A DNA stretch of 64,000 nucleotides, from positions 248,001 through 312,000 of the IMG/VR virus record IMGVR_UViG_3300035182_002586. One strand, written 5' to 3'. How positions within the stretch are numbered: the stretch's first letter is position 1; each line of letters begins with the position of its first letter. Positions 37,999 to 44,559 of the stretch are shown here, one piece after another. Under the pieces are notes generated by a model that searched no databases, was not told the DNA's origin, and worked only from the letters and a program-made list of their open reading frames with translations. A program made the translations under genes and the position numbers.

Positions 37999-39696
37999 AT
38001 GGAAGCAACCAAGAAATCCCGTCGTCCCCGATGGTCGGTCGTTCTAGGTACCGTCGCGGGAGTGGTCGCCGTTGCTCTTGTCGTGGCCTGGTTCGTCGCA
38101 CCTGTGATGGTGCGACGCTACGTGGAGCAGCACTACAAGGGGGTCCACATCCAAGGCGGGGTGACCCTATCGTTCCGTGGTGTCGCACTCCACGGGGTCG
38201 AGATCGACAGGGAGGGGGTCAAAGCACAGCTACCCCTCGTGCGTGTGCTCCCGGATGAGAGCGTCGTCGTAGAGGGCGGGACGGCTACCCTCACCCTGAC
38301 GGAAAAGCCAGGGGGCGGTAACAGCGACACGAAGAGACGGGTCGTGGGGTGGTTGGATGCGGCCACGGTCGTGCAGGGGGACGTCAAGGGGACTGCCACG
38401 AAGGTCACGTTCGACGACTTTCGCGTCTGCGCCGAGAAGGTGGAGGCGCAGCACCCAAAGGGTTCGGTGTCTGGTGCCACCGTCTGCGTGAGGAAAGACC
38501 GCACGCTCGTCACGGCCGAGGCGCTGACGGCCACACCGAGCTTCAAGCTCCCCTACATCGACAAGCTGCCGGCCCCGACCCCCAAGGACATCACCGTCAC
38601 TGGCGTCGAGTTCAAACCGAAAGAGCCGAGCGTATCGGTCAAGACGGCCACCTTTGGGCCGGTGTCGGTCAAGTCCGGGTACGCAGCGATCAAGTCCGCG
38701 ACCGTGTATCTCATGGGGGACGTGACTCTGGACCTGGCGGTTCTGCACACGGGGCCGATCACGTTGAAGGACGTGAGCACCAAGATCCCTGTGGCGGATC
38801 TGGCGAACCTGACGAAGATCCCGGTTCAGATCGGCCCCGCTCGGGTGGTGATCAGCCCGGGGGACATGTCCCTCGAAGGGGATGCGAAGTGCCAGGCGTG
38901 GGTCGATGCGTTGCCCACGGAGCTGCGTACGGGCCCCCTTGCCACGATGCGCCTGGAGGGGTCCTTGTCCTTCACAGTCGCCGTGAAGCCCCCCACGCCC
39001 ACGTTCAAGATGAAGGCGGACTGCCACGCCTCGTGTGAGGGGTTCAAGCCTCTGTCGGGGAAGTTCACCTACACGGCCTACGATGCTGACGGAAAGGAGT
39101 TCGTGCGCACGACGGGTCCGGGCACGAAGGACTGGACCCCGATCGGCGAAGTGAGCGCCACGCTTCCGGCCGCCGTGATGTCGACGGAAGACCCCGGGTT
39201 CCTCGGGCACAAGGGGGTCATCCCCGAGGCCATCGAGAACTCGCTGCGGGACGACCTCAAGGCCGACCGCTTCGTGCGCGGGGGCTCCACCATCACGATG
39301 CAGCTCGTGAAGAACGTCTGGCTCCGACGGACCAAGACGCTTGGACGCAAGACCCAAGAGGTCCTGCTGTCGCTCGCGATCGAGTCGTGTCTGTCGAAAG
39401 ACGTGATCATGGAGACGTACCTGAACGTCGTCGAGTTCGGCCCCAATCTCTACGGGGTGGGGCCCGCGTCGCAGCACTACTTCGGAGAAGCTGCGATGAC
39501 TCTCGACCCTGTGCGGTCGTACTACCTGGCTTCGATCCTCCCCGCCCCTCGAAAGGCTCCGCCCCCGAACACCGAGACCTTGGAGCGCATTCGCTCGCTG
39601 ATGATCCGTGTGTCGAAAGAGAGTGGACAGCTCTCGGACACGTTCGGAGCACCTAGCCCTCAGGACGAAGAGGGGTGGGTCGTCAACAAGCCGTAG
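37999..39696 (+). CDS. Membrane-anchored peptidoglycan glycosyltransferase (GT51, monofunctional)
   Basis: N-terminal basic stretch plus TM helix; C-terminal EDPGFLGHKG, RGGSTITMQLVKN, RKTQE and YLNVVEFG GT51 motifs; no transpeptidase domain. Confidence 0.9.
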   Translation: MEATKKSRRPRWSVVLGTVAGVVAVALVVAWFVAPVMVRRYVEQHYKGVHIQGGVTLSFRGVALHGVEIDREGVKAQLPLVRVLPDESVVVEGGTATLTLTEKPGGGNSDTKRRVVGWLDAATVVQGDVKGTATKVTFDDFRVCAEKVEAQHPKGSVSGATVCVRKDRTLVTAEALTATPSFKLPYIDKLPAPTPKDITVTGVEFKPKEPSVSVKTATFGPVSVKSGYAAIKSATVYLMGDVTLDLAVLHTGPITLKDVSTKIPVADLANLTKIPVQIGPARVVISPGDMSLEGDAKCQAWVDALPTELRTGPLATMRLEGSLSFTVAVKPPTPTFKMKADCHASCEGFKPLSGKFTYTAYDADGKEFVRTTGPGTKDWTPIGEVSATLPAAVMSTEDPGFLGHKGVIPEAIENSLRDDLKADRFVRGGSTITMQLVKNVWLRRTKTLGRKTQEVLLSLAIESCLSKDVIMETYLNVVEFGPNLYGVGPASQHYFGEAAMTLDPVRSYYLASILPAPRKAPPPNTETLERIRSLMIRVSKESGQLSDTFGAPSPQDEEGWVVNKP

Positions 39697-39735
39697 CCAG
39701 TCGGAACAATACTCTACTTATGTCTTGTTCCGGCT

Positions 39736-40170
39736 ATGCGACTCTGTACCTGCGGCAACCCTGCGATTTCCGATCGACGTATTTGCACTGCGTGCCGGAA
39801 CAGCAAGCTCCGAGAGCGTTACCAGAACGATACGGAGTTCCGTATGAAACGCCTGTCTGATATGAAAGACAGGTTCAACCCTCAGGTGCGGAGAGAGCGT
39901 TACTACGCACTACAAAGTAAAGCTCTCGCAGTGCTTGGGGGGCCCAAGTGTCGGGTGTGTGGATTTGCTGACCCCAGAGCACTTCAAATCGATCACGTTG
40001 CTGTGGACGGGTACCAACGAAGACGGCAAGGAGAGTCGGGGGAAGCTCTATATCGTAAAGTGATCCGGACTCAAGGGGTTGGGTACCAGATTCTCTGTGC
40101 AAACTGCAACTGGATCAAGAGAGTGGAAGAGGGTAACGGCGGGGGGTCAAAGTCAGGGAGGCTGGGTTAA
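39736..40170 (+). CDS. Small HNH endonuclease
   Basis: CRVCG..DPRALQIDHVAVDG...YQILCANCNWIK; lower GC. Confidence 0.8.
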   Translation: MRLCTCGNPAISDRRICTACRNSKLRERYQNDTEFRMKRLSDMKDRFNPQVRRERYYALQSKALAVLGGPKCRVCGFADPRALQIDHVAVDGYQRRRQGESGEALYRKVIRTQGVGYQILCANCNWIKRVEEGNGGGSKSGRLG

Positions 40171-40182
40171 TCGACCTATACA
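40168..40182 (+). promoter_or_regulatory. Candidate TA-N7-TAT promoter (TAATCGACCTATACA)
   Basis: Upstream of ATG 40217. Confidence 0.35.
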
Positions 40183-40216
40183 AGCGCCTCGACGTACGCC
40201 CACGAAAGGTCTACCG

Positions 40217-40618
40217 ATGCGCCCTGACGACCCCCGCTGGAAGATCGCATCCACCAGCGCCGCTGCTGTCCACGCCGCTCTCGAACACCAGTTCAAGGCC
40301 GTCAAGACGGACCCAAAGGCACTCGGAGAAGCTGCGGCGCAGACGGCGAGGAAGTTCACAGCGGCCGTCCGGGCGTTTCACACCAAGATCGAGGCGTTCG
40401 ACAAGTGGCGGAACCTCCCCGAAGGCGCCTACGAGCTGCCGGAGTTCGCGACCACGTTCGTGTGGGCGGTCGAGAAGGCGGGACCTACACCCGTAGCTCT
40501 CGAACTACGCATGAAAGAGGCGCTGGCGGAGACCCTGCTCGTCGCCCACATCACGGAAGCGTGGTTCGCGGAAGCCCTCACGGCGGTCGGCGGGACGGTC
40601 TGGACCTGGCGCCTCTGA
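40217..40618 (+). CDS. Hypothetical protein (N-terminal WKIAS motif)
   Basis: GAAAGG SD before ATG 40217; helical. Confidence 0.6.
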   Translation: MRPDDPRWKIASTSAAAVHAALEHQFKAVKTDPKALGEAAAQTARKFTAAVRAFHTKIEAFDKWRNLPEGAYELPEFATTFVWAVEKAGPTPVALELRMKEALAETLLVAHITEAWFAEALTAVGGTVWTWRL

Positions 40619-40625
40619 GCTGACG

Positions 40626-40632
40626 TGGTGTA
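40626..40632 (+). promoter_or_regulatory. TGGTGTA candidate promoter for rplL
   Basis: In the intergenic gap, 30 nt before the ATG; a GGAGG SD follows. Confidence 0.45.
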
Positions 40633-40662
40633 TACCTCCGAGTCCACCGGAGGCACCACGCC

Positions 40663-41049
40663 ATGTCGAACGTCAACACGGATCAGATCGCAGAACAGCT
40701 CGGCCAGCTCTCCGTCATGGAGCTGATTGGCCTCACAAAGAAGCTGGAGACCGCCTGGGGCGTTTCGGCGGCGCCTGCCGTCAACCTGGCCCCGCCGACC
40801 CCGTTGCCGGGCACCCCGGTCGTCGCAGAGCAGACGGAGTTCGAGGTCGCCCTCACGGGCCTCGCCGCCCCGGACAAGAAGATCTCGGTCATCAAGGTCA
40901 TCCGGGAAGTCACGGGCCTCGGCCTCAAGGAGGCGAAGGACCTCGTGGAAGCCCTCCCGAAGACCGTGAAGGAAGGCATCGCGAAGGCGGAGGCGGAAGA
41001 CCTCACGAAGAAGCTGCGTGAGGCCGGCGCCACGGTCGAGATGAAGTGA
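40663..41049 (+). CDS. rplL: 50S ribosomal protein L7/L12 (full length)
   Basis: [25 protein letters not shown] and [34 protein letters not shown]...AE.L.KKL.EAGA.VE.K; GGAGG SD. Confidence 0.97.
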
Positions 41050-41069
41050 TCGCTCCCTCGGGGCGTGTC

Positions 41070-41076
41070 CGGTGTA
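41070..41076 (+). promoter_or_regulatory. CGGTGTA candidate promoter for pyrB
   Basis: CCGGTGTACCGGCGCGCCCCGATG; no SD. Confidence 0.45.
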
Positions 41077-41089
41077 CCGGCGCGCCCCG

Positions 41090-42043
41090 ATGACGGACAT
41101 CAAACACGCAGTCTCCATCGACCAGTTCGACAACCCCTCGATCGAGAGGTTGTTCCTACGAGCCAGGACTCTTCGGGACGCCGACGTGCAGGCGAGCAGC
41201 CTCGCGGGCAAGGTCCTCGCCTGCCTCTTCTACGAGCCCTCGACCCGCACCTCGTCCAGCTTCATCGCTGCGATGACTCGGGCCGGGGGCTCGGTCATTC
41301 CGATCACTCAAGGGGTGCAGTTCTCCAGCGTCTCGAAGGGCGAGACGCTGGAAGACACGATCGTCACCCTCGGTCAGTACGCCGATGCGATCGTTCTTCG
41401 TCACCCGGAGGTGGGCGCAGCCGCACGGGCGGCCGCTGTCTCCCCGGTCCCGGTCATCAACGCCGGAGACGGTGCCGGAGAACACCCGACGCAGGCGCTC
41501 CTGGACCTCTTCACAATCCAAGAGGAGTGTGGCGGCCGCCTCGACGAGCTGAACGTGACGTTCGTGGGCGACCTTGCGCACGGCCGTACGGTGCACTCGC
41601 TGGCGAAGCTCCTCGCACGGCACAACACGAAGATCAACCTCGTCTCCCCCTTCCTTCTCCGCCTCAACCGGATCGGGGATGACGACCCTACCTACCGGGC
41701 CGTCAAGCATCGGATCGGACGGGAGCGCACCGTCAAGAACGGGCTCCACGAGGCGCAGGACATCCTGAACGATTCGGATGTCATCTACATGACGAGGGTG
41801 CAGAGGGAGCGCTTCACGTACGCGGAAGGGTACGCGGAGGTGAAGGACTCCTGCCTGCTCACGGACGAGATCGTCGCGGGGCTGAAACCTCGTGCGCGCA
41901 TCCTCCACCCGTTCCCGCGCGTGAACGAGATCCCGACCACCATCGACAAGGACCCTCGCGCGGCCTACTTCCGGCAGATTCGCAACGGGCTGTGGGTCCG
42001 GATGGCCCTTCTCGAAAGCGTCATCCTCGGGAGGACGCCGTGA
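41090..42043 (+). CDS. pyrB: Aspartate carbamoyltransferase catalytic subunit
   Basis: FYEPSTRT carbamoyl-phosphate site, SSVSKGETLEDT, NAGDG..EHPTQALLD, VGDL.HGRTVHSL, YMTRVQRER and LHPFPRVNEI. Confidence 0.95.
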   Translation: MTDIKHAVSIDQFDNPSIERLFLRARTLRDADVQASSLAGKVLACLFYEPSTRTSSSFIAAMTRAGGSVIPITQGVQFSSVSKGETLEDTIVTLGQYADAIVLRHPEVGAAARAAAVSPVPVINAGDGAGEHPTQALLDLFTIQEECGGRLDELNVTFVGDLAHGRTVHSLAKLLARHNTKINLVSPFLLRLNRIGDDDPTYRAVKHRIGRERTVKNGLHEAQDILNDSDVIYMTRVQRERFTYAEGYAEVKDSCLLTDEIVAGLKPRARILHPFPRVNEIPTTIDKDPRAAYFRQIRNGLWVRMALLESVILGRTP

Positions 42044-42074
42044 TCGTCGGCATCCTCGGTCTCGCAGGCTTTGG

Positions 42075-42089
42075 TAGTCTGGTTATAGG
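42075..42089 (+). promoter_or_regulatory. Candidate TA-N7-TAT promoter (TAGTCTGGTTATAGG)
   Basis: 11 nt upstream of ATG 42101. Confidence 0.4.
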
Positions 42090-42100
42090 ACGTCCTGAGT

Positions 42101-42931
42101 ATGGCGCTCACGAGTCACATCTACGCCCTCGTTCACCCTATATCTGGTGAGATCCGCTACGTTGGGAAGTGTGTGACGTCGCTCAAGAGACGACTTCACA
42201 ACCACGAGTACCGAGCACGTAGTGGTCGCGACAAAACCCCCAAAGGGGAGTGGATCCGGCAGCTACACCTGAGGGGGTTACACCCCCTCACCCGGCCACT
42301 CGAAGTAACCACAGAGCTTCGATGGCAGGACGCCGAACGACGGTGGATCGCCAAACTACGAGCAGAGGGACACCCGCTTCTGAACTTGCACGCTGGCGGC
42401 AACGGGGCTCACACACGTGCTGCCCTCGCCCCGCAGTATGCAAGCCTTCTCGGAACGATCTCCGACGCTCGAATCGCGGAAATGGCTGGATTGTGTCGAG
42501 AGACGGTAACGTACCACAGAAGAAGGGCTGGTATCCACGCCTCCAACGATCGCAGTCGGGTCAAGTGCACCTTCCAGAAGGGGGCACCCCCTCCTAACAA
42601 GATCGAGATCCCGTCTGCCCTGCTCGGTCAACTGGGAAAGCTGAGTGACGGGGAACTGGCCAAAACCTGCGGTGTGTCGCGAGGGCTGATTAAGCAGCGC
42701 AGAAAGAAAGCCGGGATCGCCCCTGCTCTCCCGAAAGGCAAAACGCCACATGGGACAGACCACCCCAACGCAAAGTTGACTGAGGAAGTCGTCCGTCAGA
42801 TTCGAGCAAGATACAAGCGATACAGCCGGACAGATGGGTGTGGAGTGATGGCCAAGGAACTGGGGATCGATCGCTCCACCGTGCACGACGTGGTGACGGG
42901 TAAGATATGGAGGGTAAGATATGGAGGGTAA
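42101..42931 (+). CDS. GIY-YIG homing endonuclease with repeated HTH modules
   Basis: HIYALVHP..GEIRYVGK motif; two LLG..SD..IA...G HTH repeats; C-terminal HPNAKLTEE.VR.IR. Confidence 0.85.
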   Translation: MALTSHIYALVHPISGEIRYVGKCVTSLKRRLHNHEYRARSGRDKTPKGEWIRQLHLRGLHPLTRPLEVTTELRWQDAERRWIAKLRAEGHPLLNLHAGGNGAHTRAALAPQYASLLGTISDARIAEMAGLCRETVTYHRRRAGIHASNDRSRVKCTFQKGAPPPNKIEIPSALLGQLGKLSDGELAKTCGVSRGLIKQRRKKAGIAPALPKGKTPHGTDHPNAKLTEEVVRQIRARYKRYSRTDGCGVMAKELGIDRSTVHDVVTGKIWRVRYGG

Positions 42932-42949: not shown

Positions 42950-43720
42950 ATGCTTCTAGGTATCAGCGGGTTAGCGAACAGCGGCAAGGACACGGTGGCG
43001 AAGTTCCTCGGGGAAGACCTCCGGTTCGTTGGCATCGCGTTCGCTGATCCCCTCAAGCAGATCGCGAAGACGGTCTACCGCTTCACGGACGACCAGCTCT
43101 GGGGGCCGTCCCACATGCGCAACACCCCCGACAAGCGCTACCCTCGGTCTCACACCTGGGTCCTGGCCGATCGGCTCGCCGAGCACGAGATGACGTGCGC
43201 CTGCTGTGGGGCTGGAGCCAACCGCCGACTCGTCGAAGACGACCTGCTCGTGGTCAATGAGGAAGACGTCTCCCCGTGCTACCTCACGCCGAGGTATGCC
43301 CTCCAGCTTCTCGGCACGGAGTGGGGGCGGCAGTGCTACCCCGACACGTGGGCGCTCCTTGGCGTCACCAACGCCAAGGAGCTGCTCGGGCCCAACGGAG
43401 CTGGACTTCGTTACGACAGGGCGCGTGGCATCTGGCGCTCGGACCGGCACCCGACGGAGAAGGCGGCAGGCGTCGCGATCACGGACGTGCGCTTCAAGAA
43501 CGAGATGAGGGTCATCCGTGAAGGCGGCGGGAAGGTCATCCGCGTTCGTCGACCCGGGGCTGGACTTGGGGGCGGGGCCGGGCTCCACCCCTCAGAGGCA
43601 GAGCAGGCGAGCATCCCGGATTCGGCGTTCGACGCGATCATCGAGAACGACGAGACCCTCGACGTTCTGCGTGCGCGGTCGCACGACACCCTGGTGAGCC
43701 TCGGGGCCACGGGTTACTGA
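42950..43720 (+). CDS. Deoxynucleoside monophosphate kinase
   Basis: LLGISGLANSGKDT P-loop, FADPLKQ, TPRYALQLLGTEWGR, ITDVRFKNE and HPSE are the phage dNMP kinase pattern. Confidence 0.9.
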   Translation: MLLGISGLANSGKDTVAKFLGEDLRFVGIAFADPLKQIAKTVYRFTDDQLWGPSHMRNTPDKRYPRSHTWVLADRLAEHEMTCACCGAGANRRLVEDDLLVVNEEDVSPCYLTPRYALQLLGTEWGRQCYPDTWALLGVTNAKELLGPNGAGLRYDRARGIWRSDRHPTEKAAGVAITDVRFKNEMRVIREGGGKVIRVRRPGAGLGGGAGLHPSEAEQASIPDSAFDAIIENDETLDVLRARSHDTLVSLGATGY

Positions 43721-44559
43721 CCCACGGCGGCTCGGCCAGCTTGAAGCAGTTGCGCTGAGATCGCAGGATCGAACGAAACTGGGTTCACGTACGTCATCGA
43801 TGCGGGGGCGAAGACTCGGATACGAGGGGCCTGCCTACCCTTGAACTCCTGCTTCGTCCACGCGTCGATGTCCCCTTCCATCACCCCATCGAGAGCATAG
43901 ATCAGGGCTGCAACAGCGATGGTGGTCAACGTGAGTGCCCGCTTCGGGGGCACCACCATCCAGTCCCCGAGGCCACGCGGAAAGCAGAGGATGATGTCGA
44001 TCTCGTCGGCACCCTCTGCAACGGCCACAGACACAGGGTCGTTGCGTCGGATACCCCCATCAACGTAAGAGGCCCCGTCGATCTCTACGGGCGGGAATAC
44101 GAGCGGGATCGCCGCAGAGGCGAGCACCCACTTGGCGAACGAGGCGTCTTCGCTGCTGCTCGTGTGGACCCGGCCGCTTTGCAGCTCCACCGCGCTCACG
44201 ATGCACTTTGTGTGGAAGGTCGAGCTGCCGGTGATGTACCGCTCGACCAGGTGGCGCAGCGGGGTGGTGCTTCGGAACGAAGGCTTGGCTCGAAGCCAGG
44301 GGACGATCCCGGCAAGGGCTCCGAACCAATTCGCACGATGTACGTGACGGGTGTGGAGTTGTGACCAAAGGGCAACGAGTTCGGCCGCCCGGGCCCTCTG
44401 TTCGTCCTTCGGTGCACACGCAAGGAAGGCTCCGTTGAGGGCACCTACACTGGTGCCAACGACGAGATCCCACGTCGCCCCTTGTTCAGCAAGCCCTTGG
44501 ATAGCGCCTGCCTGGAAGGCTCCGAGAGACCCGCCGCCGCTGAGGACGAGGGCTCGCAT
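43714..44559 (-). CDS. Patatin-like phospholipase
   Basis: LSGGGSLGAFQAG glycine loop, GTSVG nucleophile elbow and VDGG catalytic Asp. Confidence 0.92.
   Translation of the reverse strand: MRALVLSGGGSLGAFQAGAIQGLAEQGATWDLVVGTSVGALNGAFLACAPKDEQRARAAELVALWSQLHTRHVHRANWFGALAGIVPWLRAKPSFRSTTPLRHLVERYITGSSTFHTKCIVSAVELQSGRVHTSSSEDASFAKWVLASAAIPLVFPPVEIDGASYVDGGIRRNDPVSVAVAEGADEIDIILCFPRGLGDWMVVPPKRALTLTTIAVAALIYALDGVMEGDIDAWTKQEFKGRQAPRIRVFAPASMTYVNPVSFDPAISAQLLQAGRAAVGQ

What the first reader, a model, noticed from the sequence alone, without database searches (positions are those of the whole stretch)
40663..41049. Full-length ribosomal protein L7/L12 with a Pro-rich hinge
Phage-encoded bL12 is known but uncommon. 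This copy keeps both the L10-binding/dimerisation NTD and the factor-recruiting CTD, so it could be incorporated into host ribosomes. The normally Ala/Gly-rich flexible hinge reads [15 protein letters not shown], and the CTD has a LAAPDKK insertion. These changes could alter recruitment of translational GTPases (IF2, EF-Tu, EF-G) or evade host translation-targeting defences. It has its own candidate promoter and a strong SD.
Basis: partly seen in the sequence, partly recalled or inferred. Interest (0 to 1): 0.75.

Follow-up and report, generated by a model that had tools for sequence, protein, structure and literature searches.

The report
Huge-phage bL12 with proline-rich hinge
A 529-kb phage genome carries an intact, selectively maintained copy of ribosomal stalk protein bL12. 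This kind of gene is already known in phages. Its alanine-poor, proline-rich linker turns out to be typical of phage-borne copies.

Summary
window:40663-41049(+) encodes a 128-aa bL12 with both domains (TIGR00855 142.6 bits, cut-off 84.4).

**Setting.**
- The window lies in a 528,957-bp virus record with baseplate and tail genes, 53 tRNAs and a tmRNA.
- Searches found no rRNA, uL10, bS21, S1, IF1, RF or EF-type GTPase.

**The hinge is atypical.**
- It has 6 Pro and 5 Ala in 23 residues.
- 80 named cellular bL12 have at most 4 Pro and a median Ala fraction of 0.54.
- Every other Ala-poor-hinge bL12 whose context I checked (8 of 8) is phage-like, as are two IMG/VR phage groups and the 735-kb phage LR756501.

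**The "LAAPDKK insertion"** is only 2 extra loop residues. Some cellular bL12 (Elusimicrobia) have it too.

**Selection and descent.**
- The factor-binding helices match the consensus.
- dN/dS against a syntenic relative is 0.36 overall, 0.16 for the NTD and 0.79 for the hinge.
- The gene is inherited within a phage lineage, and no donor is resolvable (47-63% identity to everything).

**Expression signals.**
- No sigma-70 promoter was found.
- The strong SD and the AUG are buried in a hairpin.

**Most likely role:** replacing or supplementing bL12 on the host uL10 stalk.

**Verdict:** a new member of a known kind (Mizuno 2019; Al-Shayeb 2020), of moderate interest.

The parts
40663..41049 (+). 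bL12 (rplL-like) coding sequence, 128 aa including start, TGA stop
   Evidence: the ORF carries PF16320 and PF00542. TIGR00855 scores 142.6 bits (cut-off 84.4).
40663..40764 (+). N-terminal dimerisation / uL10-binding domain (residues 1-34; two helices, 6-14 and 18-32)
   Evidence: PF16320, residues 6-44. (AF2 helices, pLDDT about 88). (dN/dS 0.16 against L044).
40765..40833 (+). Hinge, residues 35-57, with 6 Pro and 5 Ala in 23 residues. Length is typical and composition is atypical.
   Evidence: composition compared with cellular bL12. (residues 37-56 have pLDDT below 50 and no helix). (dN/dS 0.79).
40834..41046 (+). C-terminal factor-recruiting domain (residues 58-128). It includes the 2-residue longer beta1-alpha4 loop (about residues 65-71, nt 40855-40875) and the conserved helices [10 protein letters not shown]...[12 protein letters not shown].
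   Evidence: aligned to E. coli, T. maritima and other solved bL12. (the query carries all invariant and near-invariant residues). (b-a-a-b-a-b fold, pLDDT about 90).
40649..40653 (+). Shine-Dalgarno GGAGG, 9 nt upstream of the ATG
   Evidence: sequence
40621..40668 (+). RNA hairpin in the 44-nt intergenic spacer. It pairs the SD and the AUG and begins 3 nt after the stop codon of the upstream ORF.
   Evidence: -26.4 kcal/mol, z -4.65, 0 of 200 shuffles fold as well. It is kept in the 141-nt fold. It is not conserved in L044 (z 0.41).
40627..40634 (+). GGTGTATA box. It is shared with the syntenic relative L044 at the same distance from the ATG, although the upstream genes differ. Possibly a -10-like promoter element or a protein-binding site.
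   Evidence: The box occurs 7 times in the 529-kb record (about 6.7 expected), so conservation with L044 is the only support.
41047..41102 (+). GC-rich hairpin that starts at the bL12 stop codon and covers the likely pyrB ATG (41090). It has no U-tract.
   Evidence: -32.3 kcal/mol, z -4.27, 0 of 200 shuffles fold as well.
40079..40618 (+). Upstream ORF of unknown function (179 aa from TTG; the true start may lie further in). Its stop codon lies 3 nt before the hairpin.
   Evidence: no Pfam or PHROG match
39736..40170 (+). HNH homing-endonuclease-like gene two genes upstream
   Evidence: phrog_2255, E 2.8e-12
41090..42043 (+). Aspartate carbamoyltransferase (pyrB) directly downstream, on the same strand
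   Evidence: TIGR00670 302.9 bits. (the query from ATG 41090 equals catalogued protein P0273).
42101..42931 (+). Endonuclease-like gene with HTH DNA-binding motifs. By eye its N-terminus looks GIY-YIG-like.
   Evidence: weak HTH hits. (phrog_59 and phrog_664).

Best explanation
This is a functional, phage-maintained copy of ribosomal stalk protein bL12. It sits in a huge tailed phage of about 0.53 Mb or more, and it is the only protein of the translation apparatus that I could find in the record.

**Shown:**
- The gene is intact and has both domains.
- It keeps the invariant factor-binding residues.
- It is under purifying selection in both folded domains.
- It is inherited within a lineage of related phages.

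**Inferred:**
- During infection the protein dimerises through its N-terminal helices.
- The dimer docks on the C-terminal helix of the host's uL10. The phage has no uL10 of its own. bL12 is a multi-copy r-protein that contacts no rRNA (PMC3299993) and belongs to the readily exchangeable class (PMC6375957).
- Its C-terminal domain recruits the host's IF2, EF-Tu, EF-G and RF3. This keeps or raises stalk occupancy while phage proteins are made with the phage's own 53 tRNAs.
- The hinge keeps the usual length but has 6 prolines with no Pro-free run longer than 5. It therefore probably cannot adopt the compact helical state described for Ala-rich hinges, and stays extended.
- This Ala-poor hinge is a shared trait of phage-borne bL12.
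- Translation of the gene is probably gated by the hairpin that buries its SD and AUG, for example through opening by ribosomes that terminate on the upstream ORF 3 nt before the hairpin.
For: **Family membership and intactness.**
- Domain and equivalog matches.
- Alignment to solved bL12 structures at 1e-23 to 3e-27.
- The query carries all invariant and near-invariant residues of 77 homologues.
- The AF2 model shows the canonical two-helix NTD, a disordered hinge and an a/b CTD.

**Phage setting.**
- Baseplate wedge, hub and tail-fibre PHROGs in the window.
- A virus record of 528,957 bp with 53 clustered tRNAs plus a tmRNA.
- No 16S rRNA.
- No uL10, EF-type GTPase, bS21, S1, RF-1, class IIb aaRS or IF1.

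**Real DNA, not chimeric at this locus.**
- One 3.5-kb contig spans the stretch.
- Identical pieces occur in two microbial-mat runs, and a relative about 96-97% identical occurs in a groundwater run.

**Retention and selection.**
- The syntenic relative L044 keeps the order transglycosylase ... bL12 ... dNMP kinase, while the genes in between differ.
- The distant relatives L049 and L048 share other genes and also carry bL12.
- dN/dS against L044 is 0.36 overall, 0.16 for the NTD, 0.36 for the CTD and 0.79 for the hinge.
- The groundwater variant has 2 synonymous changes in the NTD and none that change a residue there.

**Hinge signature.** See, with contexts.

**Precedent.**
- One phage bL12-domain protein was found in E. 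coli 70S ribosomes by MS, and viral r-protein genes are under purifying selection (PMC6375957).
- rpL7/L12 is listed among huge-phage translation genes (PMC7162821).

**Hinge behaviour.** The helix-to-extended switch and the need for flexibility are described in PMC3299993 and PMC6753160.
Against: - There is no direct evidence of expression or ribosome incorporation. No RNA run was shown to hold the locus.
- The complex prediction with a cellular (Elusimicrobia) uL10 gave 'no answer', which counts neither for nor against.
- The host is unknown, so NTD compatibility with the host uL10 cannot be judged. The NTD is at most 65% identical to any cellular bL12 in the set.
- In Mizuno et al. the tagged viral bL12 could not be used to affinity-purify ribosomes, so incorporation may be weak (PMC6375957).
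- The RBS-sequestering hairpin is not conserved in the closest relative.
- The hinge contrast partly rests on sequences that I picked for low Ala before looking up their contexts. The IMG/VR groups, LR756501 and the 80 GTDB bL12 are free of that bias.
- One IMG/VR locus (L015) has an Ala-rich hinge in a context without Pfam matches.
Confidence: 0.55

Rival explanations
1. Stalk poison or decoy. The phage bL12 forms heterodimers with host bL12, or occupies uL10 sites with a non-retractable hinge. Alternatively it binds translational GTPases off the ribosome. Either way it damps or re-programmes host translation rather than supporting it.
For: - The hinge composition departs from all 80 cellular bL12 sampled and is predicted non-helical.
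- There is no phage uL10 or GTPase partner.
- Viral bS21 lowered in vitro translation when incorporated (PMC6375957), so viral r-proteins need not be neutral replacements.
Against: - The factor-binding helices are consensus-like and under purifying selection. That fits a working CTD.
- The phage itself needs efficient translation and invests in 53 tRNAs.
- Hinge length is kept at 21-24 residues in this phage's own lineage and 18-20 in the marine phage group.
Confidence: 0.13
2. Moonlighting outside the ribosome. The protein acts as a dimeric adaptor for a phage protein. One model is a transcription role like that of mitochondrial bL12m, which binds the phage-type mitochondrial RNA polymerase (my own knowledge, not tested here).
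For: - The NTD has diverged from cellular bL12 (at most 65% identity) while staying under strong constraint (dN/dS 0.16). That would fit a phage-specific partner.
- bL12 CTDs occur inside many larger multi-domain proteins (PMC6375957).
Against: - No partner was identified.
- The domain architecture and length are exactly those of ribosomal bL12, and the protein passes the equivalog cut-off.
- The conserved residues are those of the GTPase-binding face.
Confidence: 0.07
3. Functionally neutral passenger. The gene was picked up by horizontal transfer or homing-endonuclease traffic and has not yet been lost.
For: - HNH and endonuclease-like genes flank the bL12-pyrB pair. HNH or LAGLIDADG genes lie near bL12 in L047, L048, L049 and L052.
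- The hinge evolves almost neutrally.
Against: - dN/dS is 0.16-0.36 in the folded domains.
- The gene is kept at the same backbone position in relatives whose neighbouring genes were exchanged.
- Identity to any cellular bL12 is at most 60%, so the acquisition is old.
Confidence: 0.07
4. Cellular rplL on a mis-binned or chimeric contig, not a phage gene.
For: - IMG/VR labels the record 'provirus', and the protein is also seen on a 620,031-bp contig.
- Many 'phage' database hits to bL12 are bacterial contamination. H10, for example, is secE-nusG-rplKAJL-rpoB.
Against: - There is no rplJ or rpoB next to it, and no uL10 or 16S anywhere in 529 kb.
- It lies 5 kb from a 30-kb baseplate/tail module.
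- The same arrangement recurs in independent metagenomes and in related phage contigs.
Confidence: 0.02

Closest known systems
Cellular ribosomal protein bL12 (L7/L12; TIGR00855; e.g. E. coli 1RQU/1CTF, T. maritima 1DD3)
   Same: - Same length class (128 aa).
- Two-helix NTD, a hinge of about 23 residues, and an a/b CTD.
- All invariant and near-invariant residues are present, including the helix 4/5 face KxxVIKxxR...[12 protein letters not shown].
   Different: - Not in an rplJ-rplL-rpoB operon, and no L10-leader RNA.
- The hinge has 6 Pro and 5 Ala, against 2.2 Pro and 12.5 Ala in cellular copies.
- The beta1-alpha4 loop is 2 residues longer, which is rare but present in some cellular bL12.
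- At most 60% identical to any cellular protein found.
Virus-encoded bL12 of Mizuno et al. 2019 (PMC6375957) and rpL7/L12 of huge phages, Al-Shayeb et al. 2020 (PMC7162821; LR756501, 735 kb)
   Same: - A phage-borne bL12 under purifying selection, proposed to enter host ribosomes.
- It sits in a huge phage with many tRNAs.
- LR756501 also has a full-length copy with an Ala-poor hinge.
   Different: - The cultivated-phage examples are mostly CTD-only, or a CTD embedded in larger proteins of 98-724 aa. This one is full length with the NTD.
- It is only 34% identical to the LR756501 copy.
- Those papers do not discuss the hinge or the NTD.
Full-length bL12 of uncultivated phages found here: the syntenic relative L044/P0002 (63%), L049/P0165, L048/P0192, L050/P0170, L047/P0184, L052-L054, the marine T4-like group (L002, L022) and the GC-70% group (L016, L023, L027)
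   Same: - Full length, with an Ala-poor hinge.
- Non-ribosomal, phage-like neighbourhoods, often with homing endonucleases.
- L044, L048 and L049 share other genes with this phage.
   Different: - Its 6 hinge prolines are matched by two rows of the 169-homologue set (P0017, P0151; contexts not looked up) and exceeded by one (P0192, 7 Pro, phage-like context).
- Its CTD is closer to the cellular consensus (79% to Elusimicrobia P0003) than that of its nearest phage relative (61%).
- The RBS hairpin is specific to this phage.

Membership tests
bL12 (ribosomal protein L7/L12, TIGR00855 / PF16320+PF00542) | N-terminal dimerisation / uL10-binding domain | tested here: met
   PF16320 scores 47.1 bits (cut-off 25) over residues 6-44. 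AF2 shows helices 6-14 and 18-32.
bL12 (ribosomal protein L7/L12, TIGR00855 / PF16320+PF00542) | C-terminal a/b domain with the conserved GTPase-binding helices | tested here: met
   PF00542 scores 94.5 bits over the full model, 1-67. K73, V76, I77, K78, R81, L86, G87, L88, K89, E90, A91, K92 and V95 are all the invariant or near-invariant residues.
bL12 (ribosomal protein L7/L12, TIGR00855 / PF16320+PF00542) | Equivalog-level full-length score | tested here: met
   TIGR00855 scores 142.6 bits against a cut-off of 84.4, covering 1-128 of the protein and 1-125 of the model.
bL12 (ribosomal protein L7/L12, TIGR00855 / PF16320+PF00542) | Flexible hinge of about 20 residues, normally Ala/Gly-rich | tested here: inconclusive
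   Length is met: 23 residues against a mean of 23.8-24. Composition is not typical: 6 Pro and 5 Ala, outside the range of 80 cellular copies for Pro. The hinge is predicted disordered.
bL12 (ribosomal protein L7/L12, TIGR00855 / PF16320+PF00542) | Binds uL10 and is part of the 50S stalk | not testable with these tools
   Complex prediction with Elusimicrobia uL10 gave 'no answer'. The host is unknown.
Cellular rplKAJL-rpoBC operon copy with L10-leader autoregulation | rplJ upstream, rpoB downstream, L10 leader RNA | tested here: not met
   The neighbours are an unknown ORF and pyrB. No PF00466 match in 529 kb. No Rfam match in 39500-42200 apart from a chance miRNA hit.
Virus-encoded ribosomal proteins (Mizuno et al. 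2019) | Encoded on a bona fide viral genome | tested here: met
   Baseplate and tail PHROGs in the window. An IMG/VR record with 100% CheckV estimate. A tRNA array and no rRNA. Caveats: the 'provirus' label, and no terminase or capsid hit was sought successfully.
Virus-encoded ribosomal proteins (Mizuno et al. 2019) | Under purifying selection after transfer | tested here: met
   NG86 dN/dS is 0.36 against L044, 0.16 for the NTD and 0.36 for the CTD. dS is about 0.8, so the estimate is rough.
Virus-encoded ribosomal proteins (Mizuno et al. 2019) | Incorporated into host ribosomes | not testable with these tools
   This needs biochemistry. The published precedent covers one phage bL12-domain protein only (PMC6375957).

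The most novel reading that the evidence does not exclude
Phage-borne full-length bL12 proteins form one or a few old viral lineages. Their shared signature is a hinge of normal length that has lost the alanine-rich, helix-capable character and become proline/polar-rich and permanently extended. Under this reading the signature is adaptive. It would change how the host stalk captures or releases translational GTPases in favour of phage protein synthesis, and it would let viral bL12 be told from cellular bL12 by sequence alone. In this phage the gene would additionally be translationally gated by an RBS-sequestering hairpin.
Probability: 0.2. Interest if true: 0.6.

Novelty: new member of a known kind. 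Interest (0 to 1): 0.35.

Why it matters
bL12 is the ribosome's recruiting arm for every translational GTPase. A phage that supplies its own copy, with no uL10 and none of the translation factors searched for, can only act through the host stalk.

This makes it a clean natural experiment on how hinge composition, as opposed to hinge length, affects factor recruitment.

The finding adds a well-documented full-length example from a genome of 0.5 Mb or more. It also adds a comparative observation that the two key papers do not discuss: phage copies share Ala-poor hinges.

It does not change the picture that huge phages carry pieces of the translation apparatus.

Tried and rejected
- **Sigma-70 promoter scan** of 39600-42200 found 0 sites. 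Its count in the genome equals expectation.
- **Rfam** found no L10 leader or other RNA family.
- **Complex prediction** of the phage NTD dimer with Elusimicrobia uL10 gave no answer. It is not used as evidence.
- **Phylogeny.** 91 rows by 103-128 columns is too short to resolve much.
  - Query plus P0002 come out as sisters (SH-aLRT 93).
  - One clade for the four related phages is neither recovered nor rejected (p-AU 0.21).
  - The nine-row test did not finish.
- **Donor or host search.**
  - The best cellular bL12 are 47-60% identical over many phyla.
  - pyrB points weakly to Chloroflexota among named hits.
  - The left-end OmpA-family protein points to inconsistent MAG labels.
  - The host is left unresolved. 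A GC match with one Elusimicrobia MAG (64%) is too weak to use.
- **'phages' collection hits** to Listeria, Salmonella, Staphylococcus and Acinetobacter 'phages' were rejected as likely bacterial contamination. Only H10 was inspected; the rest is inferred.
- **Terminase_6C** gave no hit in the record. Phage identity therefore rests on the baseplate and tail genes, the tRNA array and the IMG/VR/CheckV call.
- **Population variants** from read laying were of limited use. Positions 40870-40990 are swamped by cross-mapping cellular bL12.

Full report
**1. What is there**

window:40663-41049 (+) is an ATG-to-TGA ORF of 128 codons.
- Pfam finds the bL12 dimerisation domain at residues 6-44 (47.1 bits) and the bL12 C-terminal domain at residues 60-128 (94.5 bits, whole model).
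- The NCBIfam equivalog TIGR00855 scores 142.6 bits against a cut-off of 84.4, over the full length.
- The protein aligns end to end with solved bL12 from several bacteria, including E. coli and T. maritima, at E 1e-23 to 3e-27.
- An AlphaFold2 model built on 77 homologues gives the canonical layout: helices 6-14 and 18-32, an unstructured stretch at 37-56 (pLDDT below 50), and a b-a-a-b-a-b domain with pLDDT about 90.

**2. Where it is**

The window is positions 248001-312000 of a 528,957-bp IMG/VR virus record. The same protein was also seen on a 620,031-bp contig. GC content is 63.9% throughout.

Evidence that this is a phage:
- In the window, the minus strand from 3.8 to 35 kb carries a tail module. 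It has a gp6-like baseplate wedge (E 2.5e-24), a baseplate hub/tail lysozyme and tail-fibre PHROGs.
- The record holds 53 tRNA genes, a suppressor-type tRNA and a tmRNA, all clustered at 123-176 kb.
- It holds no 16S rRNA.

bL12 is the only copy in the record. Searches of the record found no uL10, EF-type GTPase, bS21, S1, RF-1, class IIb aminoacyl-tRNA synthetase or IF1.

The gene lies in a plus-strand block, in this order:
- PBP-type transglycosylase
- HNH endonuclease
- unknown ORF
- bL12
- aspartate carbamoyltransferase
- endonuclease-like/HTH gene
- dNMP kinase

There is no rplJ or rpoB. This is a phage gene, not a piece of a ribosomal operon.

The 'provirus' label is doubtful.
- The leftmost genes include an OmpA-family protein. 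Its 56-84% homologues sit on many unnamed contigs of 440-660 kb with inconsistent MAG labels.
- The pyrB homologues behave the same way.
- This looks like a family of phages of about 0.45-0.66 Mb. It is not proven.

**3. Is it real DNA, and is it maintained?**

- One 3.5-kb contig of the probable source run spans the stretch without a difference.
- Two microbial-mat runs hold identical pieces.
- A groundwater run holds a relative about 96-97% identical. In the bL12 N-terminal half its differences are two third-position synonymous changes (Ile22, Thr25).
- A more divergent contig has Ala55Val at the hinge end.

The closest database protein is P0002 (63% identity).
- It lies on a 5.7-kb contig that is syntenic with the window. 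The transglycosylase C-terminus is 78% identical, bL12 63%, dNMP kinase 67% and the next gene 81%.
- The genes between these anchors differ.

More distant relatives also carry bL12.
- L049 has a transglycosylase at 36% identity and bL12 at 52%.
- L048 shares two other genes at 57-58% identity.

Nei-Gojobori dN/dS against L044 is 0.36 overall (0.29/0.81). It is 0.16 in the NTD, 0.36 in the CTD and 0.79 in the hinge. dS is high, so these values are rough. Even so, both folded domains are clearly constrained and only the hinge sequence drifts.

**4. The hinge**

Residues 35-57 have 6 Pro and 5 Ala in 23 residues.
- Among 169 full-length homologues the means are 2.5 Pro and 11.2 Ala. Only 4 of them have 6 or more Pro.
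- An independent sample was not chosen by hinge: 80 named cellular bL12 from GTDB genomes, 62 with uL10 detectable in the 1.5-kb flank. There the maximum is 4 Pro (mean 2.2) and the median Ala fraction is 0.54. The query has an Ala fraction of 0.22.
- Hinge length is normal.

The more interesting result is that this is not a private oddity. I looked up the neighbourhoods of eight other Ala-poor-hinge bL12 (P0184, P0192, P0165, P0170, P0174, P0199, P0237, P0229).
- All eight lie among small unknown ORFs, HNH/LAGLIDADG endonucleases, a sigma factor or an anti-Pycsar gene.
- None lies next to rplJ or rpoB.

Three further phage sets also have Ala-poor hinges:
- the marine GC-31% IMG/VR group, which sits next to T4-like gp6/gp7 baseplate genes on a 177-kb contig;
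- the GC-70% group on contigs of about 150 kb;
- the 735-kb phage LR756501 of Al-Shayeb et al.

Thirteen named cellular copies have hinge Ala fractions of 0.46-0.65. Thirteen phage-context copies have 0.04-0.27, with no overlap.

Caveats:
- The eight looked-up proteins were picked for low Ala first.
- IMG/VR locus L015 has an Ala-rich hinge in an uninformative context.

Published work describes the Ala-rich hinge as switching between a compact helix and an extended form. It calls hinge flexibility essential (PMC3299993, PMC6753160). A hinge with Pro at positions 4, 10, 11, 13, 15 and 18 cannot form such a helix. I infer that it is permanently extended. This is inference, not a result.

**5. 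The 'insertion'**

From TEF to VIK the query has 21 residues, against 19 in 153 of 169 homologues. That is two extra residues in the beta1-alpha4 loop, not a seven-residue insert.

The same two-residue lengthening occurs in:
- the syntenic phage relative P0002;
- the bona fide cellular Elusimicrobia bL12 P0003, which has the identical [13 protein letters not shown] and sits in an rplJ-rplL-rpoB-rpoC context;
- 2 of 80 GTDB copies.

It is therefore compatible with ordinary bL12 function. The residues that follow match the consensus. These are K73, I74, I77, K78 and R81, then L88-D93. By the alignment they correspond to E. coli K65, V66, I69, K70, R73 and L80-D85. That stretch is the GTPase-binding face known from the literature (my own knowledge).

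**6. Origin**

- No cellular bL12 exceeds 60% identity.
- The best hits are spread over Elusimicrobiota, Proteobacteria classes, Myxococcota, Acidobacteriota, Verrucomicrobiota, Nitrospirota, Cyanobacteria and others.
- The CTD is closest to Elusimicrobia (56/71). The NTD is closest to the phage relative (27/34), then to a Pseudomonadota-labelled group (22/34).
- Trees on 103-128 columns are unresolved. A single clade of the four related phage copies is not rejected (p-AU 0.21).
- 'WGV' occurs in 129 of 182 aligned sequences and is not diagnostic.

The acquisition is old and the donor cannot be named.

**7. Expression signals**

- GGAGG lies 9 nt before the ATG.
- The 44-nt spacer folds into a hairpin at 40621-40668 (-26.4 kcal/mol, z -4.65, 0 of 200 shuffles as good). 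It pairs both the SD and the AUG, and it begins 3 nt after the stop codon of the upstream ORF.
- A second hairpin starts at the bL12 stop codon and covers the likely pyrB ATG (-32.3 kcal/mol, z -4.27).
- Neither hairpin has a U-tract.
- No sigma-70-like promoter is found, and no Rfam family such as the L10 leader.
- A GGTGTATA box 29 nt before the ATG is shared with L044, although the upstream genes differ. L048 has GGTGTAATA in a hairpin loop. The box is no more frequent in the genome than chance predicts.
- The RBS hairpin is not conserved in L044 (z 0.41).

My reading is translation gated by the hairpin, possibly coupled to termination on the upstream ORF. This is inferred and of low confidence.

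**8. Mechanism**

Shown: an intact, constrained, vertically inherited phage bL12 without a phage uL10 or phage GTPases.

Inferred: NTD dimers dock on host uL10, and the CTD recruits host IF2, EF-Tu, EF-G and RF3. This replaces or tops up host bL12 during infection. The hinge is non-helical and extended.

The precedent is limited. One phage bL12-domain protein was detected in E. coli 70S ribosomes by MS, but a tagged version could not pull down ribosomes (PMC6375957). The complex prediction gave no answer.

Rivals: a stalk poison or decoy, an off-ribosome adaptor role, a neutral passenger, and contamination. The last two are disfavoured by selection, synteny and context.

**9. Comparison and novelty**

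- Phage bL12 is the second most common viral ribosomal protein (PMC6375957).
- rpL7/L12 is listed for huge phages (PMC7162821).
- This is a new member of that kind. It is notable for being full length, for being the sole translation protein found in a phage of 0.5 Mb or more, and for exposing a hinge signature common to phage copies. Neither paper discusses that signature.
- Interest is moderate.

Noticed in passing
G000:C1:123254-176528 (outside the window): The record carries an array of 53 tRNA genes, a tmRNA (tag ANDNGTVITALKAAA) and a tRNA with anticodon UUA that would read the UAA stop codon. Among ORFs of at least 300 codons, the stop codons are TGA 228, TAG 103 and TAA 19.
   Followed up: partly
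window 41047-41102 and 40621-40668: The bL12 gene is bracketed by two strong hairpins without U-tracts (z -4.3 and -4.7). Each contains a GGTGTA(TA)CC element. A similar element sits in the loop of a -36 kcal/mol hairpin upstream of bL12 in L048:4101-4140. Their function is unknown.
   Followed up: partly
window 41090-42043: The phage encodes aspartate carbamoyltransferase (pyrB). Its best homologues (64-66%) lie on unnamed contigs, several of them 200-470 kb long. Named cellular hits are 55-58% identical and come from Chloroflexota/Anaerolineae. pyrB is absent from the syntenic relative L044.
   Followed up: partly
L057:970-2766 (G000:C1:970-2766): An OmpA-family protein lies at the left end of the record, with GC3 of 0.93. 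Its 56-84% homologues sit on many unnamed contigs of 440-660 kb, and the MAG labels disagree (Polyangiales, Rhizomicrobium, Acidobacteria). This suggests a family of phages of about 0.45-0.66 Mb and casts doubt on the 'provirus' label.
   Followed up: partly
proteins P0121-P0133 and others: Many proteins of 170-1066 aa carry 2-8 tandem copies of the bL12 C-terminal domain. They outrank single-domain bL12 in the profile-free search. Their genomic context was not examined.
   Followed up: no
window 39736-40170 and 42101-42931; L047, L048, L049, L052: Homing-endonuclease genes (HNH, LAGLIDADG, GIY-YIG-like) lie within one or two genes of bL12 in this phage and in four other phage contigs. This may be coincidence in endonuclease-rich genomes, or it may be a route of gene mobility.
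   Followed up: no
window 37999-39696: A 565-aa protein has a PBP-type peptidoglycan transglycosylase domain (PF00912, 148 bits). It is conserved upstream of bL12 in the relatives L044 (78%) and L049 (36%).
   Followed up: partly
phages collection hit H10 (CAKLQH020000005.1, locus L056): A record labelled 'Acinetobacter phage MD-2021a' contains secE-nusG-rplKAJL-rpoB, which is bacterial chromosome. The short Listeria, Salmonella and Staphylococcus 'phage' records that hit bL12 are probably of the same nature. Of these, only H10 was inspected.
   Followed up: partly
L022:6001-6360 and neighbours: In the marine GC-31% phage group, a full-length bL12 sits about 0.9 kb upstream of T4-like gp6 and gp7-type baseplate wedge genes. 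It also lies near a porphobilinogen deaminase gene, on a 177-kb contig.
   Followed up: partly
window 43714-44559 (-): A patatin-like phospholipase gene (PF01734, 117.6 bits) converges on the bL12-containing plus-strand block.
   Followed up: no
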